The position numbers and the translations under genes are program-made. 64,000 bases of DNA from Macrostomum hystrix. Its lineage: Eukaryota > Animalia > Platyhelminthes. The stretch lies in contig CATNEN010000007.1 in the NCBI GenBank assembly GCA_950097015.1, forward strand, positions 12,834,001 to 12,898,000. Reading direction: 5' to 3'. Positions 8,078-51,886 of the stretch are shown one piece after another; positions within the stretch are counted from its first letter, which is position 1; the number at the start of each line of letters is the position of its first letter. Below the pieces are notes generated by a model, which saw only the letters and a list, made by a program, of their open reading frames with translations, did no database searches and was not told where the DNA came from.

Positions 8078-8857
8078 CCAAAGCTGGAGAAAGTCAGCTA
8101 CGCCAGCCGAGTGCCCGCCAGGGTGCTCAGGGCCCACGTGATCCTCGGCGCCTTGCAGCTGAGCGCTGGGCTGCTGGCCCTCATCGCGAGCATAGTCGGC
8201 ACGGTCTACGGAGCCTCGATGAGTGATCTCTATCTCGGTGTCTCGGGCAGCGGTATCTGGTCCGCGCCCTTCTTCGTTGCCGCCGGCATCTGCGGGCTGG
8301 TGGCCGGCAAAAGCGTGAAGCGCTGCACCCTGTGCTGCGTGGTCAGCTGCCTGGTGCTCAGCATCCTGGCCTCCGTGTTCAGCGGCTCCGCCCTTATCAT
8401 CGAAGCCATCCTGACGTCAGAGAACAGCTGGAGATTCTATTCTAGGCCTGGCCACTGCCGCCTGCTGCACAGTTTCAAGGTCGCCAGAGCGATGGGCATA
8501 GTCTGCTGCCTGCTGTTTGCCGCGGAGCTGGTGCTGGCCATTGTGCACGGCGCCTTCGCATGCAGGGCCTCCTGCTGCTGTGTGCCCGCTGCGGTCCCTG
8601 TCGGCCAGCAACCGCAAGCCGGTGACGTCATCACCATCTACATGCCGGACGGCCAGCAGCTGACAGCGGCTTCAAATGAAGTGGTGTTCGTGGCAGCCCC
8701 CGAATTCGAACATCAGCCCGCCTTCAACCCGAACTTCCCGCAGTTCTCCAGCTTCCAGCAGCAGATGGTCCAGCAGACCTATGGACCGCAGCCGCCGGCC
8801 TACGATGACCGGCCCGAGGACCACGTTGCCGCCGAAATGAAGTCGCACATGCCATGA
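8078..8857 (+). CDS. CD20/MS4A-like four-TM protein (only plus-strand member); no in-frame ATG before TM1
   Basis: YASRVP..VLRAHVILG..Q; GSGIW..PFF.AAGICG; CVV.CLVLSI; ELVLAIVH..FACRASCCC; PPAY tail. The frame is closed by TGA at 8021; candidate acceptor CGCACAG|8078 is in phase 0. Confidence 0.85.
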   Translation, partial: PKLEKVSYASRVPARVLRAHVILGALQLSAGLLALIASIVGTVYGASMSDLYLGVSGSGIWSAPFFVAAGICGLVAGKSVKRCTLCCVVSCLVLSILASVFSGSALIIEAILTSENSWRFYSRPGHCRLLHSFKVARAMGIVCCLLFAAELVLAIVHGAFACRASCCCVPAAVPVGQQPQAGDVITIYMPDGQQLTAASNEVVFVAAPEFEHQPAFNPNFPQFSSFQQQMVQQTYGPQPPAYDDRPEDHVAAEMKSHMP

Positions 8858-9239
8858 CTGAGAAATGTTGAGAAAATGCTCCAGGTGCTGTTTTACATGG
8901 GCATGAGTAGCCCAGCAATTCTCAGTGGCGACTACCGCATTTCCTTATTTATGTTTTACTAAGCTGCTCACTAAGCGTTCGTAACTAAGCAATTCTCTTA
9001 TTTATTTGTCAATTTACGCAGCTTTTATAGTGTTTTACAGAAAGCCATAGCATTGTACTTGAGCATCAGTGATTTAGCATCAACTTTTACTGCGATTTTA
9101 AAGATAATAAAGCGACATTAATTTAAATCGACTTGCCGCTTACATATTTTCGACTGCACAAACATCAGCCTCCTTTTGTAAACACCGCTTTTTTATATCC
9201 TAAAAAGTCATGGGCTCGAGTCAAGGCGAAAAAGAGTGA

Positions 9240-9590
9240 TAGTGAAAGGATTATAGGGACAGGCAGAGTGATAGGGACTGGAAATAGTGACAGGAACTGG
9301 TGATAGTGACAGGAACAGGTGATAGTGACAGGAACTGGTGATAGTGACAGGAACTGGTGATAGTGACAGGAACTGGTGATAGTGACAGGAACTGGTGATA
9401 GTGACAGAAACTGGTGATAGTGACAGGAACTGGTGATAGTGACAGAAACTGGTGATAGTGACAGAAGCTGGTGATAGTGACAGAAACTGGTGATAGTGAC
9501 AGAAACTGGTGATAGTTACAGGAACTGGTGATAGTGACAGGAACTGGTGATAGTGACAGGCAGAGTGACACGGACTGGTGATAGTGAGAG
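9240..9590. repeat. 19-bp minisatellite (GTGATAGTGACAGGAACTG)
   Basis: ~17 copies. Confidence 0.95.
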
Positions 9591-9762
9591 GCAGAACTTG
9601 CAAACAAGAAGCCCAGCTTCAGGGGTCAAAAACGGTAAGCCAAAAAAAGACGAGAAAAGTCGCGATGCAATGCCAGGTCCGTCAAACAAATGCTGGGCGC
9701 ACGCAAATAAGGCGGGTCAATGGCCTGTGTAATTGAGCTGTGATCACCTCCCAGCCCCCTAG

Positions 9763-13062: not shown

Positions 13063-14053
13063 TCACTTCTCAGAGGCGACCTCCTCATAGGGCGGCGGCA
13101 GAGGCTGCAATGGGCAGCCCGCGGCCTCATAGGGCGGCGGCTCAGGCTCCGCTGAGGCTCCCAGGACGGCCGCCGGGTTGTCGTCGACTTCAACGCCGTC
13201 GCTGCAGTGTTGCGCAGCCAGGAGGCGCCGGTAGAAGCCGAGAAGGCAGGCGAGCTGGGCCGTGGACAGCAGCAGTGCTAGGCATTCAACGACCGTCTTG
13301 GCAACGCCAATGTAGAATACAGCAAGGTAGGCCTGTGGGACAGAATGGAAAAAACTGGTTGCTGTCATGATAAATACCTGTTGCTGTCACGATAAATACC
13401 GGTGTTGCTGTCATGATAAATACCGGTTGCTGTCATGATAAATACCTGTTGCTGTCATGCTAAGTACCTGTGGCTGTCATGATAAATACCGGTTGATGTC
13501 ATTATAAATACCTGTTGCTGTCATGATAAATACATGTTGCCGTTGTGAAAAATACCGGTAGCTGTCATGATAAATACAGGTTGCTGTCAAGATAAATACC
13601 TGTTGATGTCATGATAAAACCGGTGTTGCTGTCGTGATAAAAAATGTTAGCGCCTCCCATCACCTGTTCGCGCATCCGCATCCGGGTCTGATCGTACAGG
13701 CGCCGGTTCTTGGCCAGGGTGGCCGCCTCAACGGTGGCGGCAGCAGCAGCCAGCAGGACAGCCCCCGCTGCCGCCAGTCCGCCGGCCAGGCAGCGCCGTC
13801 GCAGGTTGCGGCGGGCGGTGGCGGCGGAAATGGCGAGGCCACCGGACAGCAGCAGGACTGCGCCGCACCAGAAGCCAGTGCCGCGGACGGCGTAGTCGGA
13901 GCGCATGACGGTGGCGAGGACCTCCAGCAGCACCAGCGAGCAGCCGCAGAGCACCGCCAGGGTGCCGAAGTTCTTGTGCGCGCTGCGCTGCTTGGCCAAG
14001 AACTGCGGCTCCTGCGGCATTGAAGCAGTGGCGCGGGCAGTGAAGTTAGACAT
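13063..14053 (-). CDS. CD20/MS4A-like four-TM protein; exons 14053-13664 and 13332-13063
   Basis: TM1-3 with GTGFWCG in exon 1; phase-0 intron CAG|GTGATG...TCCCACAG|GCC filled by a 22-bp repeat; TM4 and two PPPY motifs in exon 2. Confidence 0.8.
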
Positions 14054-14069
14054 CTGTCTGACCTTCAGT

Positions 14070-15300: not shown

Positions 15301-16094
15301 TCACTTTTGTCCAGCAGGTCCAGCACTCCCGAATTCAGATTCGCACGCAGGGGGCGCACTGGGTTGCTGATACGGATTTCGCGGAGGCTGGGCGGCAAGG
15401 AGAACAGTCTGCTTATACGGATAGCCGAGTAGCTGGCCACGGAAGAGCGGCGGTGAGCCAGTCAGGAGCATTTGCTGCTGCTGCTGCTCATTGAACCCAG
15501 CAGATGCGTCGGGCACATAGCAGCAGGAGGCGCGGCAGGCGAAGGCGGAGTGTACGATGGCCAGCACGAACTCGATGGCACAGAGCAGCGAGCAGGCGAC
15601 GCCGAATCCGAAGACAGCGATGAAGGTGTTCTTCTGCGCTGGTGGCGACTGCGGGTTCATTTAGGAAAACTCCTGGAAAACGTAGGTGTTAAAAGCCACA
15701 GCAGTGGCCTCGCTGAGAAGGCTGAGAAGGCGAAGATCGAGGCAAGGACTGACAGCACCAGGTAGGTGATCACGCAGTCCAGGGTGCAGCAGCATGCGGG
15801 CCGGCCCGCCAGCAGGCCGGAAATGCCGGCGGCGATAAACAACGGGCCGGACAAGACACCACCACCAACAAGCAGGAATTTCCACATGATAAAACTCCTT
15901 TCACTTGAGACAACCAGCACCGTGCCACTGCCGGCGGCAAGCGTAACAACACTGACGGCGATGACCAGCACTCCGATCAGCAGCTGAAGGAGGCCCATGA
16001 TGCGGTGTCCACGAAGCACCCAGGCCGGGACATGGCTCGCGTAGCTCCCGAGAGATGCCGCCAGGATCTGCGGCGGCGGCCGTCTCTGTAGCTG
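15301..16094 (-). pseudogene. CD20/MS4A-like pseudogene, close paralog of 17478-18509
   Basis: Family motifs present, but a frameshift near 15715 (at a GCCTTCTCA duplication) and an in-frame TAA at 15661-15663. Confidence 0.8.
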
Positions 16095-17477
16095 CTGCAA
16101 GGGGTCAGTGCACACGTACCTCGTACTGGGTTAATTGAGATATTGTGAGCATGTGAATCCGCCCTGAGTTCCTGCAGACATTGTGAGCATTCAATTGCAC
16201 CCTGAGTTCCTGCAGACATTGTGAGCATGCAATCAGACCATTATTTCCTGCAGACATTGTGAGCATGCAATCAGACCATTATTTCCTGCAGACATTGTAA
16301 GCCTTTAATTCTGTTCTTGATTTCAATTAAGTAAATGAGAAAATGTGAGTATCTCAGCTGGAGCATTCCAGCAATGTTTTAGTGTATTTGTAGGGCTGTT
16401 GTTCTATGAAAATAGCGGCTGAACAGTAAATGTTTGCACAGGTAAAGTCACAGCCTGTCTGGAGTAACAAGCAGAGCAAAGACCGGAATAAGAAATGGAG
16501 ATTAGGCAGGTGGGTTGACTGAAAATATTATAGAGTAGGATGCGGTGCGCGATATCTGCCACACAGGGGCGTCTGAGATAGCTCGCAAAACAAATAAATA
16601 CTTGCTTAAAGCTGGGATGAGGGTGCAGTCGATAGGAAACAAAATCAGTACATTGGTAAACACTTTAGCAGTCTGCAGAATTAAATATCCTATTTATAGA
16701 GAAGGTGATTCATGTCAACAGTAGAACTACCAAGCCATCTTGCCTCCCGTTTTTATACAAAGGGGAGACTAGGCGAGGGTGTCCTGTGGTTGAGCTGCTA
16801 TTTAGGCTTGGTCAGTGAAATTTGTGAAATTCGCGTCTGGGTGTCCGCAGTGGCCAAGTTCCACCTGTTGTAGCCCTTGAAGATCCAGCAGTCCGTCTAG
16901 ATAGGTGTCACCGAACACGGAGATGATGAAGTCACATTCGGGTGACATGCTGATCAATTTTAAAGGCTTGGCGAGGCCGCACTGAGGCGCAGTGCTAATT
17001 CATGTATAGTGGTGTATGAAATACACAAGTGCATATGGGAAAAATCCGACCTTCGGACAGAACCATTGAATATCTCGACGGTCTGAATAGCTGCGACTTG
17101 ATTATTGTTTCAGAAGATGCGCAACAAAAATTAGGCCCAAGTTCTTGAGTTTCATGTGCTTGCTTTGCTCAGTTCAGGTGCAGCACAAAAAAACAGGTGG
17201 AAAAATTGGGGGAATTCCCCCTTGGTAGTTCTACTGTTAAAATGTGAGAATTGCAAGCCGGGCAAATACTTACAGATAGAGATAGAACAGGTAAAAATTT
17301 CTGTACGCAGGTATGTTCAGCTTCTTGTCATAAGACTCAGCCCTCTCTCTTGTCACTCTTGTCATATGACAAGAAGCTGAAAACAGTTGTAAAATATCAG
17401 TCAGCCGACAGTTTCCACCCATAGTGAGTGTCTCGCGTTCAGTCCGTTTTGGCAATTCCCGGATAGCGGGCGGCCCG

Positions 17478-18509
17478 TCAAAACTTCCGAATGGCACCGG
17501 CTCCGCCATGCAGGGAGGACTCGTAAGACGGTGGCAAATCTCCTGAACTTGTTCCGGCCTGAGGATCCGGGTATCCGGCCTGAGGACCCGGGTATCCGGC
17601 CTGAGGACCCGGGTATCCGGCCTGAGGACACGGGTATCCGGCCTGAGGACCCGGATAACCAGCCTGAGCACCCGGATAACCAGCCTGAGCACCCGGGTAT
17701 CCAACCTGAGCACCCGGATAACCAGCCTGGGACACAGGATATCCGGGTGGCGGCGGGTGTCCGGGCAGGGCCGTGAAGAAGGTGACTTGCTGGCCGGGAT
17801 AGGCCACCAGCTGGCCAGTGTAGGGCCCGGGCTGGCCGGCCAGGAACACCTGATGATGCTGTTGCTGGTGCTGGTAGCTGGTAGCAGCCGATGGCACGCA
17901 GCAGCAGGAGGCGCGGCAGGCATAGGCGGAGTGCACGATGGCCAACACGGACTCGAAGGCTAGGAGCAGCACGCAGACGATGCCGGTGCCATAGACGGCG
18001 CCGTAGGCGGCCTCGTTTTGCTTGCGAGAGTCGCTGTTGGAATCCTCAAACACTTGGCGATTTATGGAGGCCAAGATGGCCTCAGTGATCATGGCCGAGA
18101 AGGCGATTGTGGAGGAGAAGATGGAGAACACCAGACAGGTGACCACGCAGCCCAGGGTGCAGCCGCCACGCGGGCGGCCTGCCATGAGGCCGGCGATGCC
18201 GGCAGCAATAAAGAACGGACCGGACCAGAGGCCGCCACCGGCCTGGCTGAATTGTCGATAGACGGAGTAAGAGTAAGAGTACCTGATGTACATAGTCTTG
18301 CCGGAGCCAGCGGCCAGGCCGACAATGTTGATGACGATGACCAGCACTCCGATCAGCAGCTGCATGATGCCCATGATGCGGTGGCCGCGCAGCACCCAGG
18401 CCGGAACGCGGCTCGCGTAGCTCCCAGGAGCCGCTGTCGGGGTCGACGTCACTGCCACCACATGTGGTGTGGAAGTCACCACCTGGCTTGGCTGTACCTG
18501 TGGCTGCTG
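17478..18509 (-). CDS. CD20/MS4A-like four-TM protein with a (QAGYPG[AP])n tail; no in-frame ATG before TM1
   Basis: All family motifs; 21-bp coding repeat at ~17560-17735; LPPSY motif. In-frame TAA lies just upstream; acceptor TTTTATCTTGCAG|CAG is in phase 0. Confidence 0.9.
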   Translation of the reverse strand, partial: QQPQVQPSQVVTSTPHVVAVTSTPTAAPGSYASRVPAWVLRGHRIMGIMQLLIGVLVIVINIVGLAAGSGKTMYIRYSYSYSVYRQFSQAGGGLWSGPFFIAAGIAGLMAGRPRGGCTLGCVVTCLVFSIFSSTIAFSAMITEAILASINRQVFEDSNSDSRKQNEAAYGAVYGTGIVCVLLLAFESVLAIVHSAYACRASCCCVPSAATSYQHQQQHHQVFLAGQPGPYTGQLVAYPGQQVTFFTALPGHPPPPGYPVSQAGYPGAQVGYPGAQAGYPGAQAGYPGPQAGYPCPQAGYPGPQAGYPGPQAGYPDPQAGTSSGDLPPSYESSLHGGAGAIRKF

Positions 18510-21465: not shown

Positions 21466-22350
21466 TCAGGCCTTCCCTGGCTGATAGAACTGAGCCTGCT
21501 GAAGAGGCTCGGCCTCTAGCTGCTGACCCGGGTAGGCGGGGGGCGCGGCGCCAGGAGCGGGCGAGAAGTAGGCCTGGATGGCCCGGTAGGAGCAAGCGGC
21601 CTGTGCCAGGGCGAGGATGAAAACTAGCCCATCGTGGGCACTGCTAACAATTCCCATAGGCAGAAAGAAAATTTCATAGTACTTGGACTCGCAGGGCAGG
21701 CTGGCGTTGACTGCCAGGCGGCTGGAGAGATGCTGGGCGGAGAAGGCCTCCTGGAGCATCGCACCCATCGACAGGGCGGCAGTCAGGGCGCCCATCACCA
21801 GGCTGGCACTCATGCTGCACTGGAGACGAGCGTTTGGGTGGAATGTCCGTGCATGAATGCAATCTATTTTTTTATCTGTAATCGGCTCCCCACGCAACAT
21901 AGTTATCACTATGACTGAACTATACAGTAGTTGGGTTCGTAACTTTATGAAACTAAATATATAAATATGAAGACCATATCAATATGCCCAGAGGTTGGGT
22001 CTCGCAATAGAACTAGCACGGTGAATGCCCCGGTTGCGCTATCGTCACAGGGCAACTGAATTACTCTTGCCTACTGCATGTCTGCCTGATAGAAGCCAGT
22101 CAACCATGACCCTGCTCACCTGTGTCCTGGTGCCCTTGCTGCCCGCCATCAAGCCCAGGTAGGCCAAAGCAAAGACGAGAGGAAACAGCAGGAAGTCAAC
22201 ACTAAAGCATGCCAGGGGGCCGCACAACACGGCGCTCACGAGGCTCAGGATCCCAAGCATCATCTGAAAGATGCCATTGAACATCAGCGTGAAGCCAAGG
22301 CCCCAGAGACCATGCGACACCGGCTTTGGCACTGACAGGCTGATCAGCAT
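21466..22350 (-). CDS. Divergent CD20/MS4A-like four-TM protein; exons 22350-22120 and 21819-21466
   Basis: Two TMs per exon joined by a phase-0 intron CAG|GTGAGC...CTCCAG|TGC; PPAY tail. Confidence 0.75.
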
Positions 22351-22908: not shown

Positions 22909-23504
22909 GGGTGGATTTAGCGGACGTTTTGGTAAATGCTAATGCATAACTTCCAATGCAATAGGCTAAAAAAGAACATTAAAGCACTTTAGCACTTCTT
23001 AGACAAGCTCGATTGAATAAAAATATTTCTTTTTGTCTTGGGGAATTTCACAGTCGACTTTTGAAAACGGCTCACAAAAGCAAAACAAGACTAGAAAAAC
23101 TGCAGTTAAATGCAAACACAAGAGCGCAAATGATGCTGAGGTGCAGATTCATAAAGCTTTCCAACCAGGATGACAGATGAAAAAGACGCAAAGGCTTTGC
23201 TAAGTGCTAGCTAACTAGCTAAAGCTGCGAGTAAAATACTGCGATCAGATTTAACTGAAATCAAATAAACCATCCACAAACGCAGCTTAAAAACTCAACA
23301 ACTGGCTGATAAAAACACTCTTCCGATTGCAACAAGAGTAACAGGGAATGCGAGAACATGATTGATGTACATTCGTTCAACATTAACAACTGGATTGCAA
23401 CTGGCTGATAAAAACACTCTTCCGATTGCAACAAGAGCAACAGGGAATGCGAGAACATGATTGATGTACATTCGTTCAACATTAACAACTGGATTGCAAC
23501 TGGC

Positions 23505-23831
23505 TGAGGCCTTCTCCGCCTGTAGGAACTGAAGAGGCTCGGCCTCTAGCTGCTGACCCGGGTAGGCGGGGGGCGCGGCGCCAGGAGCGGGCGAGAAGTA
23601 GGCCTGGATGGCCAGGAAGGAGCAAGCGGCCAGTGACAGGGACAGGATGACCACCAGCGCATTGTTTGAGATGATGATTATGTTCATCTGCTAAAGCTGG
23701 CCGGTGGGCCGCACAGCACGAGGCTCAAGAAGCCGAGAGTTCGGCTGCAAGCAGGCACAGAAAATCATCGTGAAGCCCAGACCCCAGACGCTACTGGACA
23801 CAGGCTTAGGTATCGACTGGCTGATGAGCAT
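23505..23831 (-). pseudogene. Internally deleted duplicate of the 21466-22350 gene
   Basis: MLISQSIPKPVSSSVWGLGFT and AIQAYFSPAPGAAPPAYPGQQLEAEPLQ match the neighbour; the middle is deleted, a stop is present, and the 3' end runs into a 99-bp duplication (23298-23505). Confidence 0.8.
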
Positions 23832-36968: not shown

Positions 36969-37059
36969 GGCCTCTGAAGTCAGAAGGAATGAGGCCAGAG
37001 TGACCAAAGACCACCTGAGTACTTAAGCTCAGAGAAATGCACTTGTCTGCCCATCCTTC

Positions 37060-38780: not shown

Positions 38781-39443
38781 TCACTCCGCCCACCAGCGCG
38801 GCCACAGCGCTGCCTGCAGCTGCCAGGAGCGATCGAGCTGATCCCCAGCGGCGGAGTCAGCCGGCAGAGCTGTTTGAGGCCCGGACTGGCCAGCTGCAGA
38901 AAAGTCGGCGGCTTCAACGAAGGGAGTGGCCGTCCCAGCCGCAGTCGCCGCAGCCGCTGGCTGTGTCTCGGTCCAGATGCAGTTGGCGGCCAGCATGTAG
39001 AACACCAGCTGTACGATGTTGACGGCCAGGGTGACGAGGAACAGCAGGATCCAGACGATGTCGGCCGGCTCGAAAAGCATGCAGGGCTCGCTCCAGAAAC
39101 AGTCGGAGCTGTTGAAGCGCTGGAGCAACGAGTCCGCTGGCAGCAGCACGCAGGGCGCCGTGCCCGACACAATCAGCATGACCAGGAATGCGGAGCTGGC
39201 GGCCACGAAAGCGCTCCGCTGGCAGCAGCCCTTGCCGAATAGGATGCCGAGAATGCCGGCTGTGAGCAGCAGCGGCGCGGTCCAGAAGCCGCTTCGCATG
39301 CGGGCGCGGAAGCTGAAGTCGCGGCGCAGGCCCTGCTCGTCAAGCAGTAGGATGATGAGCGCGCAGCCCAAGCCGAACTGGGCCGCGCCCGTTCCCAGCT
39401 GCACCTCCCTCACACGGGTTGGCACGATCCTGTGCGTCACCAT
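38781..39443 (-). CDS. CD20/MS4A-like four-TM protein
   Basis: RIVPTRVREVQLGTGAAQ, SGFWTAP...AGILGILFGKGCC, loop with DC...EPC; the frame is open further up to a candidate acceptor at 39494. Confidence 0.8.
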   Translation of the reverse strand: MVTHRIVPTRVREVQLGTGAAQFGLGCALIILLLDEQGLRRDFSFRARMRSGFWTAPLLLTAGILGILFGKGCCQRSAFVAASSAFLVMLIVSGTAPCVLLPADSLLQRFNSSDCFWSEPCMLFEPADIVWILLFLVTLAVNIVQLVFYMLAANCIWTETQPAAAATAAGTATPFVEAADFSAAGQSGPQTALPADSAAGDQLDRSWQLQAALWPRWWAE

Positions 39444-39934
39444 GGCAACGCGCTGGGCTGTGGAGTTGGCGAGCGGGAGTTCTATTCTTAGCACCTGCTT
39501 CTTATCTGCTAGTCTAGCTAAGTCTTATAGCCACACGCCTCAGCTAATGAGATGTAGATGAAAATAAAAAGAATAAATGATAATGATAATGACAATAAGC
39601 TTATAAATGATGTAAAAAAAATTAAAAAGTTCTGCACTGCAGCGGGTTCAGTATATATATATATTTGTATTGTCTAAATTTTGATGTGGAAATCAGTTTT
39701 CAGAGCAGAATGACAAAAGCGGTTCGTAACAAAGTACGAGTATTTTTCACAAAGATGGTAGAAATTTCACGTTAAAAATATAGTTTTGGAAGACAAACTA
39801 GCGGTAAAGAATAGATTTATTTGCAAAGCTGCTTACTTAACCTCTGAGCAAATTATGAGAAAACTTTTTAGTGAGATGCGAATAGAATTAGTACAGCGAA
39901 ATCTTGCTACCCACATCACAGATGTGATCTTGCT

Positions 39935-42172: not shown

Positions 42173-42555
42173 GTGTGCTGGCTGGCGACGACCCGCAATG
42201 TCTGGTTGCCGTTGCTTTATGTTGCGGTCTTCATAGCACCTGTTGCCTGTGTAGGGCGTGACGGCCGAGACGGCGACAAGGCAGATGAAGGCGGCCACGC
42301 AGGTGAGAATGGCGAATACTAGGCAAGCCACGACGCTGCAAAGCACAACAGACCAAAGATGCCCGCCGCCAGCTGCGCGAACGGCGCCAACGAGGAGCCG
42401 ACGCCGGTTGAGGCAAAGCCCCCAGCGATGCCGAAGGCGGAGACCAGCAGCAGAAGGCAGAACAGGCTGATCTGGAGGCCGCCAATGATCACGTCACTCC
42501 ATCCTAAGGCCGCGGGGAGTCGCTCCGCGAAAGTGTTCGCTGGCTGCTGCGGCCG
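42170..42555 (-). pseudogene. CD20/MS4A-like pseudogene truncated by the 14-bp satellite
   Basis: TFAERLPAALGWSDVIIGGLQISLF...LAAGIFGL, frameshift near 42340, then CSVVACLVFAILTC; no TM4 and no ATG; phase-0 acceptor CTACTGCAG|CGG. Confidence 0.8.
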
Positions 42556-44218: not shown

Positions 44219-45028
44219 TCATTCTTTTGGCGGCGCGCTGGCCGCGGCCGGCCTAGCGGCGGTCTCCCGCATTATCTGGTCGTAGGACGGCGGCTGCTCC
44301 GGGGCGGAGTGCGGCGGCGGATAGCTCGGATTGAAGGCCGGCTGCTGCGCGGGGTACGGGTGGTACGGTGGCTGCGCCTGCGGCTGCTGCGCGGGGTACG
44401 GGTGGTACGGTGGCTGCGCCTGCGGCTGCTGCGTGGGGTACGGGTAGTAAGGCGGCTGCTGCTGCTGATGCTGCGGCGGCGAGCCCACGGTGATGACCTG
44501 CGTGACCAGGTAGGGAGAGCCCGGCTGCATAGGCGGGGCAGCGGGCACGCAGCAGCAGGAGGCGCGGCAGGCATAGACGGAGTGCACGATGGCCAGCACG
44601 AACTCGAAGGCGAACAGCAGGGCACTCAGGATGTTCGTGGCGTAGGTTGTGCGCAGCAGCGATTCACTGCCGCGGGCGCTGGAGCTCCTGTAGTTGAAGG
44701 CGTAAATATTGCTGGAAGCCATGATGGAGTCGAGCACGAGGCCGGGGAAAGCCAGGGCGCTGGCAATGATGGAGAACACCAGGCAGCTGACCACACAGCC
44801 GAGGGTGCCGCAGGAGCCGCGCCCGGCATGGAGGCCGCAGATGCCCGCAACGATGATGAAGGGGCCGGCCCAGAAGCCGCTGGCCACAGAGAAATAGTCC
44901 TGCTTGGTAGACAGGCCGATGATGGTGAGCAGGACGAGCAGGCAGCCCACCGTGATCTGCATGATGCCCAGGGTCACGTGACTCCGCAGGACCGCCGTCG
45001 GCACGCGGCTGGCGTAGTTGCTGGCCAT
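44219..45028 (-). CDS. CD20/MS4A-like four-TM protein with a Pro/Gln/Tyr-rich tail
   Basis: YASRVPTAVLRSHVTLGIMQ, SGFWAGPFIIVAGICG, CTLGCVVSCLVFSI-type segment, AIVHSVYACRASCCC, 42-bp coding repeat, PPSY. Confidence 0.92.
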   Translation of the reverse strand: MASNYASRVPTAVLRSHVTLGIMQITVGCLLVLLTIIGLSTKQDYFSVASGFWAGPFIIVAGICGLHAGRGSCGTLGCVVSCLVFSIIASALAFPGLVLDSIMASSNIYAFNYRSSSARGSESLLRTTYATNILSALLFAFEFVLAIVHSVYACRASCCCVPAAPPMQPGSPYLVTQVITVGSPPQHQQQQPPYYPYPTQQPQAQPPYHPYPAQQPQAQPPYHPYPAQQPAFNPSYPPPHSAPEQPPSYDQIMRETAARPAAASAPPKE

Positions 45029-45728: not shown

Positions 45729-46331
45729 TCAGTAGCGGCAGGGCTGCTCGCTGCTCACGAACTGAGACTGTGGCGACATCGCCCGGTTCTGCTGACCGCC
45801 TTCCGGCCAGCCTTCGGAAGCGCCGTCAAACGGTGCTTCCACGCGCCGTCTGGGACGGCAGGTGAAGCGGGCGGCGATGCAGGCGTGCAACAGCGAGGCG
45901 GCCATAGCGAGAACCAGCAGGCAGCAGATAATGATGTCCGCCACCACGACGCAGCGCGGCCCGAGCGTCCTGAAGCCGGGGCAGAAGCGGTTGATGCGCA
46001 CAGCAGCCGCAGCGAGGCAGCCGACTGCGGTACCGAAGGCGCCAGTGCTAAGGATCTGGCAGGCGAGGTTTAGCCGGACGGCCCGACGCGGCAGGTGGAC
46101 AGCCAGAAGGCCGAGGACGCCAGCCACAACGCAGGCAGGACTGGCCGATACGCCAAAGGGACTGCTGACGTTGTGACCGGTGGCCAGGCTGGCAATGCTC
46201 GAGACAAACAGTGACACGCCGACTGCGACTTGCAGCCAGCCGAGGGTCACGTGACTTCGGCGCAGCCAGTCCGGCAGCGGGAAGCTGCGGCTGCCACCGC
46301 TGCGAGCGGCTTGGGTTTTACAGCCCTTCAT
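45729..46331 (-). CDS. CD20/MS4A-like four-TM protein
   Basis: LPDWLRRSHVTLGWLQ, four TMs, LHACIAARFTC; acceptor CACTTTCAG|CAG CTG ATG in frame. The 5' extension in the ORF track is a microsatellite. Confidence 0.8.
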   Translation of the reverse strand: MKGCKTQAARSGGSRSFPLPDWLRRSHVTLGWLQVAVGVSLFVSSIASLATGHNVSSPFGVSASPACVVAGVLGLLAVHLPRRAVRLNLACQILSTGAFGTAVGCLAAAAVRINRFCPGFRTLGPRCVVVADIIICCLLVLAMAASLLHACIAARFTCRPRRRVEAPFDGASEGWPEGGQQNRAMSPQSQFVSSEQPCRY

Positions 46332-46371
46332 CAGCTGCTGAAAGTGAGAGCAGATGGACATGGATTTGATA

Positions 46372-46535
46372 ACCTGACCTGACCTGACCTGACCCGACCT
46401 GACCCGACCTGACCTGACCTGACCTGACCTGACCTGACCTGGCCTGACCTGACCTGGCCCGACCTGACCTGACCTGACCTGGCCCGACCTGACCTGACCT
46501 GACCTGACCTGACTTGACCTGACCTGACCTGACCT
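46372..46535. repeat. Pentanucleotide microsatellite (ACCTG)n
   Basis: ~32 copies. Confidence 0.95.
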
Positions 46536-47027
46536 AGCTGGAAAATAGAAAACACAGAAAGTGAGCGAATAACGGCTAAATATTAAGGTTAGAATGTTGC
46601 TCGATATCAAGGTGTGCGAGGTGCATCAGATTATGCTATAAATATTGGAATATGCGCTAAACGCACAATACTGCATTCGGGCTACTGCATGCCAGAACAG
46701 CATTAAAAGCTGCGAATGTATAGGTATAGGTATAAAGTGACGAAGAGAGAAGTGTGACGTTAGAAAAAGTCACATGATTTGCTGATAGGGGCGGTGCCAA
46801 CTGGGCAGAAGTCGCGAAGGAGTTAGAAGTAGAGAATATCTATAAAAAAGACTAGTTGAAGCAAGCATAGTCAACAAAATCTCTGCTCACGGGTAGCAGA
46901 TAGAAAATAACAAACATAAAAGCGCCTCACTCCTAGATAAAACGTGTGCAAAAAGCATCGGAAAATAATAAAGACTAGACAACCATTGCGAACCAAATGC
47001 ACAGCTAAGAGTAAAGCTAATTCAATA

Positions 47028-47830: not shown

Positions 47831-48827
47831 CTAATTGCCGGCCTTTGAAGCTCTCATCGCCACATCATAGGATGGCAGGCCGTCGTCCAGGCTGGCGGTG
47901 TCGCGCGGCTCCAGTGGCACGCGCTGATATTCTTGACAATAGCCATGCTGTTGCTGCTGCCGCAGCTGCCGCTCCTCCTGCCGCAGCTGCAGCTGCTGCT
48001 GCGCCTGCTCCAGGGCGAACTTGCTGGGCACGCAGCAGCAGGAGGCCCGGATGGCGTAGCCGGCTTGCGCCCCGGAAAACAGAATCTCCAGCAGGCACAG
48101 AAGCAGGGCGGTCTGCGTGGGGAGAAACTTAGCTGTCAGTGGACCGCTGTGGGGCTGGACACTGAGGGCTGGTCACTGAGGGCTGGACACTGAGGGCTGG
48201 TCACTGAGGGCTGGACACTGAGGGCTGGTCACTGAGGGCTGGTCACTGAGGGCTGGTCACTGAGGGCTGGTCACTGAGGGCTGGTCACTGAGGGCTGGTC
48301 ACTGAGGGCTGGTCACTGAGGGGCTGGTCACTGAGGGCTGGTCACTGAGGGCTGGACACTGAGGGCTGGTCACTGAGGGCTGGACACTGAGGGCTGGACA
48401 CTGAGGGCTGGACACTGAGGGCTGGACACTGAGGGCTGGACACTGAGGGCTGTGAGCACATTGTGTGAGCACATTGAGTAGACCAGCAAGCCAACCTGCT
48501 GACGGCTGATCTCCTGCTTTGACTGCGGAGCATCCGAGTGGTACATCACGAGGAGACTGACAAGGCCGGCCAGGCCGGACAGCATGGCGAACATCAGGCA
48601 GGCCAGGACGCTGCACAGGATTTGGCGCTTCAGGCAGCCGGCCAGCAAGCCGAAGATTCCAGCCAGCACGCCGCTCAGAGACATCAGGAAGCCGAAGCCC
48701 TTTGCTATGTTGATCAACTGCATCAGGTTCAGTATCAGCGACATCAGAGAGAAGGAGAGCTGCGCGATGCCAAGGCTCACGTGAGCTTTGCGCACAGCGA
48801 CCGGGACCCGCTCCAAGTACGTGCCCG

Positions 48828-48862
<35 letters not shown>

Positions 48863-48885
48863 AATACCGGTATTGAGGTGGCCAT
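47831..48885 (-). CDS. CD20/MS4A-like four-TM protein; exons 48885-48496 and 48112-47831
   Basis: PolyQ N-terminus, YLERVP..VRKAHVSLGIAQ; phase-0 intron CAG|GTTGGC...CCACGCAG|ACC containing a 14-bp repeat; exon 2 TALLLCLLEILFSGAQAGYAIRASCCC...LPSY. Confidence 0.85.
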
Positions 48886-49566: not shown

Positions 49567-49905
49567 TATGTATGTATGTATGTATGTATACTCTACATAC
49601 TTGACTGCCAAATTTGAGAAGTGCAGAGACGGAATATTTAGTCTGTAGAATATTAAAATTGTACAATATAAGGTGTAGAGTATAGAATAGAAAGAAAGTT
49701 TAATAAAAATAGGAGGCCTCTCAGGGCGAGGAACCCGGCCGTGACGGACCACGGGGCTCGGGCGAGCTCGGACATTGTGGGTCGAAACTGATGGGCAGCT
49801 GCTGAAAGAGATTGGAGCAGTTTGACTTTCCAGAGATCCTCACTCTAGCTCCCATCTCTGAGCTTCACGCTCAAGGAATCCTGGTTGAAGCTCCTTCACT
49901 GAACG

Positions 49906-50800
49906 AATGACCCAACAAATCAGGACTGAATTCGAGAATGACCCAACAAATCTGGACTGAATTCGAGAATGACCCAGCAAATCTGGACTGAATTCGAGAA
50001 TGACCCAACAAATCTGGACTGAATTCGAGAATGACCCAACAAATCAGGACTGAATTCGAGAATGACCCAACAAATCTGGACTGAATTCGAGAATGACCCA
50101 ACAAATCTGGACTGAATTCGAGAATGACACAACAAATCTGGACTGAATTCGAGAATGACCCAACAAATCTGGACTGAATTCGAGAATGATACAACAAATC
50201 TGGACTGAATTCGAGAATGACACAACAAATCTGGACTGAATTCGAGAATGACCCAACAAATCTGGACTGAATTCGAGAATGACACAACAAATCTGGACTG
50301 AATTCGAGAATGACACAACAAATCTGGACTGAATTCGAGAATGACCCAACAAATCTGGACTGAATTCGAGAATGATACAACAAATCTGGACTGAATTCGA
50401 GAATGACACAACAAATCTGGACTGAATTCGAGAATGACCCAACAAATCTGGACTGAATTCGAGAATGACCCAACAAATCTGGACTGAATTCGAGAATGAC
50501 ACAACAAATCAGCACTGAATTCGAGAATGATACAACAAATCTGGACTGAATTCGAGAATGACCCAGCAAATCTGGACTGAATTCGAGAATGACCCAACAA
50601 ATCTGGACTGAATTCGAGAATGACACAACAAATCTGGACTGAATTCGAGAATGACCCAACAAATCTGCACTGAATTCGAGAATGACCCAACAAATCTGCA
50701 CTGGGAACATTGGGAGTGGAGCTACTGGCTGCACTGGGAACATTGGGAGTGGAGCTACTGGCTGCACTGGGAACATTGGGAGTGGAGCTACTGGCTGCAC
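49906..50800. repeat. 31-bp minisatellite (one EcoRI site per unit) followed by 33-bp x3
   Basis: Unit GAATGACCCAACAAATCTGGACTGAATTCGA, ~25 copies. Confidence 0.95.
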
Positions 50801-51277
50801 TAGACAGCCACTGCATTTACCATCCGCAGGCAGCAGCATGCTGTCACTGAAGCCACAAAAAGTGAGGCTATGGAACACGAACGCTTAACTCGCACAAACC
50901 GAAGCTTTAACCGTATAATTACATAAAACGCCAGAAAACACACCTGATTTCGAGTGGGGAAGCTGGGGCTCGCCGCACCCAGACAGAAACAGAGGCAGAG
51001 AAAATATAAGAGCGGGAGTTGTTCTGTTGTGGGCATTTGTGGGCTTCATGCAGGCTGGGTCAATAATCAGCCACCTGTTGACCGCAGGTGCTAACTGAAT
51101 TCGAATTTGTCAATGGAAGTGGAGCTGAGCAGTCTGAGCCCGACAACAAGTCAGAATGCGCGGGTGGTCCCGACACCATAAAGCGACAGCCTGAATGACT
51201 AGAGAAACGCAAACCGATTCTGCAAAAATGCTCGAAGCTCCTCAACATGGCATCCACAGCAAGCCAGAAAATGTGAG

Positions 51278-51886
51278 TCAACACACGGCTGCACCGGCCT
51301 CATCATCTGGGGGTAACTTCAGCGGCACCGCCTCCGCCTCAGTGTCGGATGGTGGCGGCAGTAGCTGGACGCTCGACGACGGCGGCGCGGAGCTGATCGG
51401 CGCGTGAAAGGCGACCTGCGGCTGGCCCGGCAGCGGCTTGAGGCGGAAGCAGACGGACAGGGCGATGAGCATCTGGGAGAAGCTGAGGATGAGGCCGAGA
51501 GCGGCAGTCATTATGTAGAACATGAAGCTGCCGAGGCCGTCGCAGGCGCGGTTGGCAAGGACGCCGTCGACTCCATCGGAGAAGTTGAGCCAGAACAAGG
51601 CGCTGCCGGCGATGGCCAGGCCGAGAGAGGCGGCGGACAGCACCAGGGTGGCGATGGCCAGGCGGCGGTAGTAGGGCAGGCTGCGGTAGTCCCGACGGCA
51701 CAGCGGCAGGCAGGCGGCGCCGGCAGCCGCGGTGCAGCCGCCCAGCAGCAGGCAGCAGTGCAGCAGGCCGGTCCAGCTGTGGCAGCCGCGGGCGAGGAAG
51801 GCCAGCCCGCCGAAGAAGGTGGCCACGCCGAAGGCGGCGAAGAAGCCGCCGGTGATGGCCAGCGGCGCGACCGGGCAGCGGGACAT
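51278..51886 (-). CDS. Divergent four-TM protein, probably CD20/MS4A-like
   Basis: Four hydrophobic segments with family-like spacing, TLVLSAA in TM3, SFSQMLIALSVC in TM4, Pro-rich tail. Confidence 0.7.
   Translation of the reverse strand: MSRCPVAPLAITGGFFAAFGVATFFGGLAFLARGCHSWTGLLHCCLLLGGCTAAAGAACLPLCRRDYRSLPYYRRLAIATLVLSAASLGLAIAGSALFWLNFSDGVDGVLANRACDGLGSFMFYIMTAALGLILSFSQMLIALSVCFRLKPLPGQPQVAFHAPISSAPPSSSVQLLPPPSDTEAEAVPLKLPPDDEAGAAVC

What the first reader, a model, noticed from the sequence alone, without database searches (positions are those of the whole stretch)
8078..51886. Tandem array of 18 highly diverged CD20/MS4A-like four-TM loci: candidate invertebrate receptor repertoire
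Seen: 14 apparently intact genes and 4 pseudogenes in 44 kb, 17 of them co-oriented. Most share YxxRVPxxVLRxHxxLGxxQ / SGxWxxxF..AGxxG / CxVxxCLVxSI / AIVHxxxACRASCCC. Known: vertebrate MS4A genes are clustered, fast-evolving tetraspans that act in immune signalling, and they have been reported as non-GPCR chemosensors in mouse necklace olfactory neurons. Inference: an independent birth-and-death expansion serving chemosensation, immunity or self-recognition in this animal.
Basis: partly seen in the sequence, partly recalled or inferred. Interest (0 to 1): 0.85.

Follow-up and report, generated by a model that had tools for sequence, protein, structure and literature searches.

The report
Flatworm CD20-like four-helix gene array
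A 44-kb stretch of the flatworm Macrostomum hystrix holds 18 tandem copies (14 apparently intact, 4 broken) of a small four-helix membrane protein related to the vertebrate CD20/MS4A family. The genes are real and at least three are transcribed, but nothing yet shows that they are sensory or immune receptors.

Summary
Between 8078 and 51886 there are 18 related loci, 17 on the minus strand. Fourteen look intact and four are broken or fragmentary (g15, g23, g34, g42).

The genome is the published M. hystrix assembly: total size, contig count and N50 match exactly.

Single proteins fall just under Pfam's CD20 cut-off. A profile of six paralogs reaches solved FcεRIβ (MS4A2) at E=2e-5. 58 of 64 of its database relatives carry PF04103. 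An AlphaFold model matches FcεRIβ best (Z 16.3).

RNA contigs show g13 spliced at a GT..AG intron. Transcripts also cover g15 and g17, and g17 takes its AUG from the spliced leader.

The cluster, with an embedded GRWD1 gene, also exists in M. lignano. Several pairs look 1:1 orthologous at 49–80% identity, so most duplications are old. Four dead copies and one young duplicate 400 kb away show continuing turnover.

Outer loops are the most variable parts. A juxtamembrane Cys cluster and C-terminal PPxY motifs are conserved. This suggests palmitoylated adaptors that recruit WW-domain ligases. A chemoreceptor or immune role is untested.

Verdict: a new member of a known kind, of moderate interest.

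The parts
8078..8857 (+). g08: intact single-exon paralog and the only one on the plus strand. It has no genomic in-frame ATG. An in-frame AG acceptor at 8076-8077 suggests that the spliced leader supplies the AUG (inferred).
   Evidence: ORF and HMM hit of 303 bits. 5' sequence and acceptor analysis. Closest M. lignano protein is P0003 at 49%. PPAY in the tail and a CRASCCC cluster.
13063..14053 (-). g13: intact two-exon paralog. Exon 1 is 13664-14053 and exon 2 is 13063-13332. The 331-nt GT..AG intron (13333-13663) holds a 22-bp minisatellite. The tail has two PPPY motifs and there is no Cys cluster.
   Evidence: RNA contigs of runs X3 and X4 join 13331/13663 with CT..AC on the plus strand. 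The unique frame-compatible junction reads ...MRMREQ|AYLAVFY, which matches the M. lignano protein P0158; identity is 80% over exon 1. Pfam CD20 scores 25.4 bits on exon 1.
15301..16115 (-). g15: transcribed pseudogene with a frameshift after TM3 and an in-frame TAA at 15661-15663.
   Evidence: Two-frame HMM hits and the sequence itself. The RNA contig over 15169-16095 shows no correcting indel and has a 23-nt overhang at 16095, where an in-frame AG acceptor lies.
17478..18509 (-). g17: intact paralog whose tail carries (GYPGPQA)n encoded by a 21-bp coding minisatellite, followed by PPSY. The mRNA is SL trans-spliced at 18510|18509, and the leader's AUG is in frame with the ORF.
   Evidence: ORF. 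RNA contigs cover 17106-18510. The loose end at 18510 is the reverse complement of CTCAATTTATTGCAT, which is nt 20-34 of the M. lignano spliced leader. Acceptor sequence. No genomic ATG lies before TM1. Closest M. lignano protein is P0001 at 65%.
21466..22350 (-). g21/22: diverged paralog, probably two exons (TM1-2 in 22045-22350, TM3-4 plus a PPAY tail in 21466-21909). The intron is inferred only.
   Evidence: HMM hit of 18.7 bits, E=1e-4, on exon 2. Frame reading. Several frame-compatible GT..AG pairs exist.
23295..23687 (-). g23: fragment that duplicates only TM4 and the PPAY tail of g21. No upstream exons were found.
   Evidence: ORF translation compared with g21. No HMM hit for TM1-3 nearby.
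25014..25688 (-). g25: intact single-exon paralog with a long ECL2, a CRASCCC cluster and no PY motif.
   Evidence: (280 bits).
26812..27543 (-). g26: intact paralog with a CRATCCC cluster and a PPDY tail. It has no genomic in-frame ATG before TM1. A pyrimidine-rich in-frame acceptor precedes 27543 (inferred SL site).
   Evidence: (241 bits).
29401..29985 (-). g29: intact single-exon paralog with a CRASCCC cluster and a PPDY tail.
   Evidence: (243 bits). Closest M. lignano proteins are P0005, P0152 and P0153 at about 59%.
31412..31924 (-). g31: open but strongly diverged, alanine-rich paralog. Whether it is functional is uncertain.
   Evidence: hhalign against the family alignment gives probability 92.6%, E=5e-7. 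Very long branch in the tree.
34110..34397 (-). g34: pseudogene. TGA at 34224-34226 replaces the Trp of the SGFW motif, and the copy ends inside TM3 at a 39-bp minisatellite.
   Evidence: The intact M. lignano counterpart is P0004.
36003..37007 (-). g36: diverged intact paralog and sister of g38. It has neither a Cys cluster nor a PY motif.
   Evidence: HMM hit of 36 bits. g36+g38 pair has support 99/95. Four hydrophobic segments.
38781..39494 (-). g38: diverged intact paralog and sister of g36.
   Evidence: HMM hit of 46.9 bits..
42248..42555 (-). g42: pseudogene with a frameshift between TM2 and TM3 and no TM4. It abuts a 2.2-kb (ACCATCACACACTG)n array.
44219..45028 (-). g44: intact single-exon paralog and the reference for the structure model. 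It has a CRASCCC cluster and a Q/P/Y-rich tail ending in PPSY.
   Evidence: 310 bits. AF2 model with four helices at 11-40, 45-70, 75-114 and 122-159 and a disordered tail..
45729..46610 (-). g45: diverged intact paralog. The upstream part of the ORF runs through an (ACCTG)n microsatellite and is probably not coding.
   Evidence: HMM hit of 32.4 bits.. Longest branch in the tree.
47831..48885 (-). g48: probably a two-exon paralog. TM1-3 lie in 48442-48885. TM4, an IRASCCC cluster and an LPSY tail lie in about 47834-48112. The intron holding a 14-bp minisatellite is inferred.
   Evidence: HMM hits in two frames. Frame reading. Frame-compatible GT..AG pairs include the same GTGATG donor hexamer as g13..
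51278..51886 (-). g51: conserved four-TM gene at the end of the array. Family membership is unproven.
   Evidence: M. lignano ortholog P0159 at 74%, on the same contig as cluster members. hhalign probability 17-32% only. The nearest ESM-feature cluster carries PF04103 at score 0.91.

Best explanation
**What it is (shown).** This is an old tandem array of a macrostomid-specific branch of the CD20-like (Pfam PF04103; MS4A/FcεRIβ/sarcospan) superfamily in Macrostomum hystrix. Each gene encodes a protein of about 190-345 residues with four transmembrane helices. The six best-conserved intact paralogs (g08, g17, g25, g26, g29, g44) are called core paralogs here.

**Transcription (shown for three loci).** g13, g15 and g17 are transcribed. 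g13 is cis-spliced. g17 is SL trans-spliced, and the leader supplies its start codon.

**How it most likely works (inferred).** Both termini are taken to be cytoplasmic. The proteins sit in the plasma or endosomal membrane as small scaffold or accessory subunits, as vertebrate MS4A proteins do.
- The nearly invariant Cys cluster right after TM4 (C-R-A-S-C-C-C) is S-palmitoylated and holds the tail at the membrane.
- The C-terminal PPxY/LPxY motifs recruit WW-domain proteins, chiefly Nedd4-type ubiquitin ligases. This would control endocytosis and turnover of the protein and of whatever partner it carries.
- The two short outer loops, the most variable parts, give each paralog a different partner or ligand specificity.

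**History (shown).** Tandem duplication produced the array before M. hystrix and M. lignano split. Copies have since been lost (four pseudogenes) and gained (a young partial duplicate about 400 kb away).
For: **Identity of the genome.** G000 has 220,453,370 bp in 42 contigs, and contig C7 is 13,505,968 bp. These equal the published M. hystrix assembly totals and N50.

**Family.**
- The A2 profile against PDB finds FcεRIβ at 2.3e-5, aligned from TM1 into the start of TM4, including LGxxQ and the W-G..F..G motif.
- The A3 profile finds FcεRIβ at 5.3e-19, CD20 at 5.3e-12 and sarcospan at 1.5e-4.
- The A2 profile has 939 relatives among 1.8 billion representatives, and 58 of 64 sampled carry PF04103.
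- Named relatives are MS4A-like proteins of Ptychodera and Ciona.
- 27 of the 30 nearest ESM-feature clusters carry PF04103.
- The AF2 model has pLDDT 75.6 and four long helices. Its best matches are FcεRIβ by Foldseek (TM 0.77) and by VIA-align 2 (Z 16.3).

**Transcription and processing.** GT..AG junction in g13, transcripts over g15 and g17, and the SL tag at 18510.

**Conserved cytoplasmic features against variable loops.**
- Paralog identity is 86% in the Cys cluster, 53% in the N-terminal juxtamembrane segment, 35-46% in the TMs, 12% in ECL1 and 17% in ECL2.
- The closest M. hystrix-M. lignano pairs show the same ranking.
- A PY motif lies in the tail of 45 of 64 family members, against 10.1 in shuffled tails, mostly within 30 residues of the C-terminus.
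- It is present in 8 of the 14 intact window genes.

**Age and turnover.**
- Closest M. lignano counterparts at 49-80% identity, against 81% for the embedded GRWD1, on the same M. lignano contigs.
- The macrostomid clade has support 96/84.
- Pseudogenes.
- A young duplicate with dS 0.158 and dN/dS 0.54.
Against: - No single window protein reaches Pfam's CD20 gathering score. The best are 25.4, 20.2 and 13.3 bits against 27.9.
- Four-helix bundles give high structural scores in general. Unrelated tetraspanins reach Z 14.
- Palmitoylation, WW-domain binding, membrane orientation and partner proteins are all inferred from motifs. None was tested.
- Six intact paralogs (g25, g31, g36, g38, g45, g51) lack a PY motif, and six (g13, g21/22, g31, g36, g38, g45) lack the Cys cluster. 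The mechanism cannot hold for the whole array.
- Transcription was examined only for 13000-18600. The introns of g48 and g21/22 and the SL sites of g08 and g26 are inferred.
- The careful tree resolves only g13-P0158 as a pair. g17 falls in a supported group with P0001 and P0002. g08-P0003, g29-P0005 and g34-P0004 rest on best similarity alone.
- The absence of M. lignano counterparts for g25, g26, g44, g36, g38, g45 and g48 may reflect incomplete annotation or retrieval. M. lignano DNA could not be fetched.
Confidence: 0.6

Rival explanations
1. The array is a repertoire of ligand-binding receptors, either chemosensory like mouse necklace-neuron MS4As or for immune or self recognition. Each paralog would detect different cues through its variable outer loops.
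For: - The genes are clustered, duplicated within the lineage and highly diverged, with pseudogenes.
- The outer loops are by far the most variable parts, with many indels.
- In Ciona, 29 clustered MS4A genes are reported, several enriched in larval palp cells, with positive selection on outer loops in one ascidian (preprint 10.1101/2022.08.15.492342).
Against: - No tissue or cell-type expression, ligand or selection test could be obtained here.
- The loops are short, about 7-25 and 20-45 residues, and have no conserved Cys pair.
- Several members keep one closest counterpart in a congener whose housekeeping GRWD1 is only 81% identical. Turnover is therefore slow for a sensory repertoire.
- The one young pair that could be measured gives dN/dS 0.54, not above 1.
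- Fourteen genes make a small repertoire.
Confidence: 0.15
2. The proteins form or regulate ion-conducting oligomers, as proposed for TMEM176A/B and earlier for CD20 and MS4A12. The conserved TM1 Gln and the small residues of TM2 would line a pore.
For: Q24, G28, G62 and G65 are nearly invariant across 64 family members. The family is homologous to CD20/MS4A. That MS4A and TMEM176 proteins have been proposed as channels is the author's own knowledge and was not checked here.
Against: No oligomer or pore was modelled or tested here. Conserved Gly and Gln in TM helices are equally explained by helix packing. To the author's knowledge, not checked here, solved CD20 and FcεRIβ structures show no open pore.
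Confidence: 0.1
3. The genes are MARVEL-domain proteins, the name UniRef gives to M. lignano relatives. They would then belong with occludin, synaptophysin and MAL-type vesicle and junction tetraspans rather than with CD20/MS4A.
For: UniRef labels P0003, P0004 and P0151 as 'MARVEL domain-containing protein'. Synaptogyrin and synaptophysin appear among the fold matches at Z 11.1 and 9.7. The Gly/Pro/Gln/Tyr-rich tail repeats recall the synaptophysin tail (author's own knowledge, not checked here).
Against: No Pfam MARVEL match at E<=1 in any of 20 window sequences scanned (19 family ORFs or exons plus GRWD1), whereas CD20 is the only recurrent family. 58 of 64 relatives carry PF04103 and none MARVEL. 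Sequence-profile hits in PDB are MS4A2, CD20 and sarcospan only. FcεRIβ outranks MARVEL folds by 5 Z units.
Confidence: 0.03
4. Only a handful of copies are functional genes: g08, g13, g17, g29, g44 and g51. The strongly diverged open frames (g31, g45, and perhaps g36, g38, g21/22 and g48) are decaying relics that happen to remain open. The 'repertoire' would then be much smaller than 14.
For: g31 and g45 have extreme branch lengths (3.0 and 4.4 substitutions per site), odd composition and no conserved motifs. No M. lignano counterpart was found for them. g15 shows that dead copies are still transcribed and trans-spliced.
Against: Open frames of 170-330 codons with four hydrophobic segments in the right order are unlikely to persist by chance. 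g36 and g38 form a supported pair with long but comparable branches. g31 matches a domain of M. lignano P0006 at 46%.
Confidence: 0.12

Closest known systems
FcεRI β subunit (MS4A2) and CD20 (MS4A1), vertebrate MS4A family, Pfam PF04103
   Same: Four-TM bundle of the same size. The TM1 LGxxQ and TM2 W-x-G..F..(S/A)G motifs align. MS4A2 is the best sequence-profile hit (2.3e-5 and 5.3e-19) and the best fold hit (TM 0.77, Z 16.3). The genes are clustered in the genome, and the outer loops are variable.
   Different: - Not orthologous: the macrostomid genes form their own clade.
- Single proteins fall below the Pfam gathering score.
- ECL2 is short and lacks a conserved disulfide.
- The tail has a poly-Cys cluster and PPxY motifs. 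To the author's knowledge, not checked here, the MS4A2 tail instead carries an ITAM-like motif.
- Mostly intronless, or with one intron placed after TM3.
Invertebrate CD20-like proteins (Ciona 'MS4A8', Ptychodera 'MS4A4D-like', annelid, nemertean, echinoderm and mollusc homologs)
   Same: They are found directly by the paralog profile at E 1e-13 to 1e-24. They share the post-TM4 Cys cluster (46 of 64) and the C-terminal PY motif (45 of 64). Ciona also has clustered, lineage-specific expansions.
   Different: The macrostomid branch is separate (96/84) and more diverged: 21-34% identity to g44. No functional or expression study exists for any flatworm member.
PY-motif tetraspan and multi-span adaptors of Nedd4 ligases (LAPTM4/5, NDFIP1/2)
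   Same: As far as the author knows (not checked here), these are small multi-TM proteins with cytoplasmic PPxY motifs that recruit Nedd4-family ligases and steer cargo sorting. That is the working model proposed here for the tails.
   Different: No sequence relationship was detected: no Pfam match to these families. The resemblance is functional analogy inferred from motifs only.
Sarcospan (CD20-like member of the dystrophin-glycoprotein complex)
   Same: It is hit by the family profile at E=1.5e-4 and by fold comparison at Z 14.0. It is an example of a CD20-like protein acting as a structural accessory subunit.
   Different: It is a single-copy conserved gene in vertebrates, not a diversified array, and the match is much weaker than to MS4A2.

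Membership tests
CD20-like superfamily (Pfam PF04103: MS4A, FcεRIβ, sarcospan) | Four transmembrane helices in a protein of about 200-300 residues | tested here: met
   The AF2 model of g44 has helices at 11-40, 45-70, 75-114 and 122-159. A crude Kyte-Doolittle scan resolves three to five hydrophobic segments per intact paralog, TM2 often falling below its threshold.
CD20-like superfamily (Pfam PF04103: MS4A, FcεRIβ, sarcospan) | Significant match to the family's sequence model | tested here: inconclusive
   Single window proteins score 25.4, 20.2 and 13.3 bits, below the gathering score of 27.9, and most score nothing. At profile level the six-paralog profile hits MS4A2 at 2.3e-5, 58 of 64 of its relatives match PF04103 at E<=1e-3, and the wider profile hits MS4A2 at 5e-19 and CD20 at 5e-12. 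Read as a diverged subfamily of the superfamily.
CD20-like superfamily (Pfam PF04103: MS4A, FcεRIβ, sarcospan) | Hallmark TM1 'LGxxQ(I/V)' and TM2 'W-x-G-x-x-F-x-x-(S/A)-G' motifs in register with solved members | tested here: met
   The HMMER alignment to FcεRIβ pairs lGalql with LGVTQV and GiwsgpffvaAGitG with YPFWGAVLFVLSGFL. Q24, G28, G62 and G65 are nearly invariant in 64 relatives.
CD20-like superfamily (Pfam PF04103: MS4A, FcεRIβ, sarcospan) | Fold closest to solved MS4A proteins | tested here: met
   Foldseek ranks 1-3 are FcεRIβ, with target TM-scores 0.74-0.77 and rmsd 2.5-3.2 Å. VIA-align 2 against the wide PDB set puts FcεRIβ first and second at Z 16.3 and 14.8, sarcospan at 14.0 and CD20 at 11.9. 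An unrelated tetraspanin also reaches 14.2, so fold alone is not decisive.
CD20-like superfamily (Pfam PF04103: MS4A, FcεRIβ, sarcospan) | Both termini cytoplasmic | not testable with these tools
   Inferred from homology and from the tail motifs (Cys cluster, PPxY), which act only in the cytoplasm. No topology experiment or predictor was available.
Vertebrate MS4A genes in the strict sense (orthologs of MS4A1-15) | Orthology or nesting within the vertebrate MS4A clade | tested here: not met
   Macrostomid sequences form their own clade against the sampled deuterostome and other invertebrate relatives (96/84). No vertebrate MS4A sequence was in that tree. The solved vertebrate members compared show only 13-19% identity to g44. 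These are not MS4A orthologs but a separate expansion of the superfamily.
MS4A-type chemoreceptors (mouse necklace olfactory system) | Expression in sensory neurons and ligand-evoked responses | not testable with these tools
   Only whole-run RNA contigs were available. No tissue or ligand data. No paper in the library links MS4A and flatworms.
MARVEL domain family (PF01284) | Match to the MARVEL model | tested here: not met
   No MARVEL hit at E<=1 in 20 window sequences or at E<=1e-3 in 64 relatives. MARVEL folds rank lower, at Z 11.1 and 9.7. The UniRef name is an automatic label.
Tetraspanins | Large second extracellular loop with CCG and further conserved cysteines | tested here: not met
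   ECL2 is about 20-45 residues with no CCG and no conserved Cys. The tetraspanin sequence hit is only E=0.012.

The most novel reading that the evidence does not exclude
The macrostomid CD20-like array is a true protostome counterpart of the MS4A chemoreceptor system. Its paralogs would be expressed one or a few per sensory or immune cell and would bind different small molecules or microbial or partner cues through their hypervariable outer loops. That would mean non-GPCR, MS4A-type chemodetection arose, or was repeatedly recruited, far outside vertebrates.
Probability: 0.1. Interest if true: 0.75.

Novelty: new member of a known kind. Interest (0 to 1): 0.4.

Why it matters
- A 2010 phylogenetic study concluded that invertebrates lack MS4A-like genes (PMC2826416). 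Current profiles show instead that the CD20-like superfamily is spread across Bilateria, and that a free-living flatworm carries its own 18-locus tandem expansion.
- No paper in the searchable library describes the family in flatworms.
- To the author's knowledge, Macrostomum is open to RNAi, transgenesis and in situ hybridisation. The array therefore offers a workable system for asking what ancestral CD20-like proteins do. Its conserved Cys cluster and PPxY tail give concrete biochemical hypotheses to test.
- The locus is also a clean example of two annotation pitfalls in this genome. Start codons can be donated by the spliced leader, which explains why M. lignano models are marked 'partial'. 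Introns and spacers are filled with private minisatellites.
- None of this is a surprise in kind to a specialist. Lineage-specific arrays of small membrane proteins are common.

Tried and rejected
- M. lignano DNA, synteny maps and ortholog dN/dS could not be obtained. Synteny rests on shared contig lengths reported for the proteins.
- **Thin search result.** The search for homologous proteins with the 12-paralog alignment returned only two proteins, because low-complexity words filled the candidate list.
- **Single-sequence Pfam scans.** Sub-threshold or empty.
- **MARVEL, tetraspanin and claudin readings.** Rejected.
- **g51.** hhalign, alone or together with its ortholog, does not place it in the family.
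- **Shared promoter or motif.** No shared upstream motif among the 15 start regions examined.
- **dN/dS.** Not attempted among the old paralogs, whose synonymous sites are saturated at 20-45% protein identity. My g21C versus g23 codon comparison used wrong frames and is discarded.
- **Literature.** Searches for the M. lignano gene ids and for MS4A with flatworms found nothing. The supplements of the M. hystrix genome paper hold no CD20 or MS4A term.
- **Complex prediction.** Not requested, since no binding claim is made.
- **Spliced models.** g13, g48 and g21/22 were searched exon by exon by reference. Only about 20 codons across candidate junctions were translated inside a local script to test reading frame.
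- **Reads.** Read laying was used once, on 13000-18600.

Full report
**Source of the window**

The genome search places the window at G000:C7:12834001-12898000, in a genome of 220,453,370 bases and 42 contigs. Contig C7 is 13,505,968 bases long. These three numbers equal the total length, contig count and N50 of the Macrostomum hystrix assembly of Wiberg et al. 2023 (PMC10468722). The animal is therefore that free-living flatworm. The nearest named proteins all come from the congener M. lignano.

**The observation**

ORF listing and an HMM of six intact ORFs run over the six-frame translation give 18 loci between 8078 and 51886, 17 of them on the minus strand. I name each locus after its position in kb.

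- *Intact in one exon:* g08, g17, g25, g26, g29 and g44. These are the 'core' paralogs, 32-45% identical to g44.
- *Intact in one exon but much more diverged:* g31, g36, g38, g45 and g51.
- *Two exons:* g13, g48 and g21/22.
- *Broken:* four loci.
  - g15 has a frameshift after TM3 and an in-frame TAA.
  - g34 has TGA where its M. lignano counterpart P0004 has the Trp of SGFW, and it stops inside TM3 at a minisatellite.
  - g42 has a frameshift and no TM4.
  - g23 is only a copy of the TM4-plus-tail end of g21.

A regex for the C[RK]A[ST]CC motif over all six frames finds eight loci and no orphan last exon for g34 or g42.

Two qualifications apply:
- The full motif set is shared by about eight loci rather than 'most'.
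- g51 cannot be shown to belong. hhalign probability is 17-32%, although its nearest ESM-feature cluster is a PF04103 cluster at 0.91.

A GRWD1 gene (10055-11611, minus strand) sits inside the array between g08 and g13.

**Are they CD20/MS4A-like?**

Taken singly, the proteins do not pass Pfam. The best CD20 scores are 25.4, 20.2 and 13.3 bits against a cut-off of 27.9, and most score nothing.

Taken as a family, they do.
- A profile of the six core paralogs finds the solved FcεRI β chain (MS4A2) as the top PDB hit at E=2.3e-5. The alignment runs from TM1 into the start of TM4 and puts LGxxQ and the W-G..F..G motif in register.
- The same profile finds 939 proteins at E<=1e-3 among 1.8 billion representatives.
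- Of 64 aligned proteins (63 sampled hits plus g44), 58 match PF04103 at E<=1e-3, with a best value of 1.4e-16.
- Named hits include 'MS4A4D-like' of Ptychodera and 'MS4A8' of Ciona, plus annelid, nemertean and fish proteins.
- The 64-sequence profile hits FcεRIβ at 5.3e-19, CD20 at 5.3e-12 and sarcospan at 1.5e-4.
- 27 of the 30 nearest ESM-feature clusters to g44 carry PF04103.
- An AlphaFold2 model of g44 (pLDDT 75.6) has four long helices and a disordered tail.
- Its three best Foldseek matches are FcεRIβ, with target TM-scores of 0.74-0.77.
- An exhaustive VIA-align 2 comparison also puts FcεRIβ first and second, at Z 16.3 and 14.8. Sarcospan follows at 14.0, CD20 at 11.9 and the MARVEL protein synaptogyrin at 11.1. 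An unrelated tetraspanin reaches 14.2, so the fold alone would not decide the matter.

The UniRef label 'MARVEL domain-containing' for M. lignano relatives has no support from Pfam in 20 window sequences or 64 relatives.

I therefore file the array as a diverged, macrostomid-specific branch of the CD20-like superfamily. It is not a set of orthologs of vertebrate MS4A genes. In a careful ML tree the macrostomid sequences form one clade against ten outgroup relatives (96/84).

**Transcription and gene structure**

Four runs of one 2020 study hold about 60% of the sampled words of 13000-18600. Laid on that stretch, their contigs behave as RNA.

- *g13.* One contig per run joins 13331 to 13663, skipping 331 bases. 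The ends are CT..AC on the plus strand, which is GT..AG for the minus-strand gene. A frame search finds exactly one compatible junction...MRMREQ|AYLAVFY. This is the sequence of the annotated M. lignano protein P0158. g13 is therefore a spliced two-exon gene, and its intron carries a 22-bp minisatellite.
- *g48 and g21/22.* By analogy, g48 (intron around a 14-bp minisatellite) and g21/22 have frame-compatible GT..AG pairs. These introns are inferred, not shown.
- *g15 and g17.* Contigs also cover g15 with no indel that would mend it, and g17.
- *Spliced leader on g17.* At 18510 a contig of another Macrostomum sample continues with letters whose reverse complement is CTCAATTTATTGCAT. This is nt 20-34 of the 35-nt M. 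lignano spliced leader, which ends in ...TTGCATG (PMC8629364).
  - The genome there reads ttgcttttatcttgcAG|cag cag cca.
  - The leader's AUG falls in frame with the g17 ORF, which has no genomic ATG before TM1.
  - The same-species contigs overhang by 20-23 nt at 18510 (g17) and at 16095 (g15), where an in-frame acceptor lies.
- *g08 and g26.* These also lack a genomic start codon and have in-frame acceptors, at 8077|8078 and before 27543. This is inferred.
- *M. lignano models.* Leader-donated start codons explain why the M. lignano models P0001 and P0002 are 'partial' and begin without Met.

**Age and turnover**

The M. lignano relatives sit together on contigs of 183,586 and 642,878 bp. 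The GRWD1 ortholog, 81% identical, is on the second of these. Cluster and synteny therefore predate the split of the two species.

Closest pairs by similarity:

| M. hystrix locus | M. lignano protein | Identity |
|---|---|---|
| g13 | P0158 | 80% |
| g51 | P0159 | 74% |
| g17 | P0001 | 65% |
| g34 (N-terminal part) | P0004 | 65% |
| g29 | P0005 / P0152 / P0153 | 59% |
| g08 | P0003 | 49% |

- In the careful tree only g13-P0158 (100/99) is resolved as a pair. g17 falls in a supported group with g15, its young duplicate, P0001 and P0002 (97/97). The other pairs are unresolved.
- No comparably close M. lignano partner turned up for g25, g26, g44, g36, g38, g45 or g48. This may be real gain or loss, or incomplete retrieval.
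- g36 and g38 are sister duplicates (99/95).
- Elsewhere in the genome the profile finds one or two further members at each of C7:11.65 Mb, C11 and C1.
- At C7:12.43 Mb there is an inverted young copy of the g17-g15 pair.
  - The g17 copy has both outer loops shortened and has lost its PPSY (dS 0.158, dN/dS 0.54).
  - The g15 copy lacks g15's stop but has lost its 5' part.

Duplication and decay therefore continue, but most of the array is old.

**What the proteins look like and how they may work**

Identity by region, using the g44 model to define regions:

| Region | Six core paralogs | Closest M. hystrix-M. lignano pairs |
|---|---|---|
| Post-TM4 Cys cluster | 86% | 89-100% |
| N-terminal juxtamembrane segment (YASRVPxxVLRxH) | 53% | 78-79% |
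| Transmembrane helices | 35-46% | 52-83% |
| ECL1 | 12% | 29-57% |
| ECL2 (many indels) | 17% | 23-47% |

- *PY motifs in the window.* A [PL]PxY motif occurs in the tails of g08, g13 (twice), g17, g21, g26, g29, g44 and g48.
- *PY motifs in the wider family.* 45 of 64 proteins have one after TM4, against 10.1 in shuffled tails, usually within 30 residues of the C-terminus. 46 of 64 have the Cys cluster. These are ancestral features of the invertebrate CD20-like branch, not of this locus alone.
- *Repeat-built tails.* Several tails are built from coding minisatellites: (GYPGPQA)n in g17 and a 42-bp unit in g44.

From general knowledge, juxtamembrane poly-Cys clusters are palmitoylation sites, and PPxY motifs bind WW domains of Nedd4-type ligases. 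From that I infer small palmitoylated scaffold or accessory subunits whose surface level, and that of their partners, is set by ubiquitin-dependent sorting. The variable loops would set partner or ligand specificity.

This mechanism is inference throughout. It cannot apply to the six intact paralogs without a PY motif or the six without the Cys cluster.

The receptor-repertoire idea remains possible, at about 15% for the rival as stated. It has a precedent in a Ciona preprint. It gains nothing specific from my data, because variable loops are generic and the only measurable dN/dS is below 1.

**Comparison with what is known, and novelty**

- A 2010 study concluded that invertebrates lack MS4A-like genes (PMC2826416). 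Pfam-level data and the Ciona work have since overtaken that view.
- I found no paper on the family in any flatworm and nothing in the supplements of the M. hystrix genome paper.
- The finding is therefore a new, lineage-specific member of a known superfamily, with an interesting but untested biochemical signature.

**Limits**

- Only 13000-18600 was examined with RNA contigs.
- Contigs cannot give expression levels, strand or tissue.
Only short junction translations were made in a local script.

Noticed in passing
window 3019-3468(-), 4046-4498(+), 5576-6052(+): Three tandem paralogs of about 150 aa lie just upstream of the array. Each has an N-terminal signal-like segment, one PAN/Apple domain (PF00024, E 5e-5 to 2e-3) and a hydrophobic C-terminus that looks like a GPI-anchor signal.
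   Followed up: partly
window 10055-11611(-): A GRWD1 (glutamate-rich WD repeat 1) gene is embedded in the array. It is 81% identical to M. lignano P0160, which lies on the same contig as cluster members there. The mechanical ORF runs on through a 30-bp minisatellite (10072-10501), so the true 3' end probably involves an intron or an earlier stop.
   Followed up: partly
window 7000-53000 (47 TRF rows), e.g. 39936-42169, 32349-33735, 18569-19498: Nearly every spacer, and the introns of g13 and probably g48, carry their own high-copy minisatellite (periods 13-99 bp, up to 160 copies), often within 100 bp of a start site. The 2.2-kb (ACCATCACACACTG)n block gives a GC skew of -0.78.
   Followed up: no
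window 18509/18510 and 16094/16095: The spliced leader is added at in-frame acceptors, and for g17 its terminal AUG is the only available start codon. g08 and g26 also have no genomic ATG. Gene finders that require ATG will truncate these genes or mark them 'partial'.
   Followed up: yes
window 16766-17240: A short stretch between g15 and g17 has RNA-contig word depth up to about 1300, against 10-100 nearby. It has many loose ends and non-canonical joints, as expected of a dispersed repeat or transposon fragment that is transcribed elsewhere.
   Followed up: no
window 17960-18120: RNA contigs of both same-species runs join 17960 to 18120, skipping 159 nt in frame inside g17 with non-canonical ends and possibly other letters between. 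This may be a transcript of the paralog at C7:12.43 Mb or an allele rather than a splice form.
   Followed up: no
L015 (G000:C7:12428000-12437999) 5432-6340(+) and 8558-9241(+): An inverted young duplicate of the g17-g15 pair lies about 400 kb from the array and includes the flanking 31-bp minisatellite. The g17 copy has deletions in both outer loops. The g15 copy keeps Lys where g15 has its stop but lacks TM1.
   Followed up: partly
L013 2474-2944(-) and L014 1941-2579(-) (G000:C1 about 19.00 and 19.02 Mb): Two distant family members 20 kb apart differ mostly by replacement changes (dS 0.10, dN 0.14, dN/dS 1.39 over 157 codons). Here they match the CD20-like profile at E about 1e-10.
   Followed up: partly
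window 63540-63968(+): An exon of a kinesin-associated protein (KAP/KIFAP3, PF05804, E=2e-43) lies at the right edge of the window.
   Followed up: no
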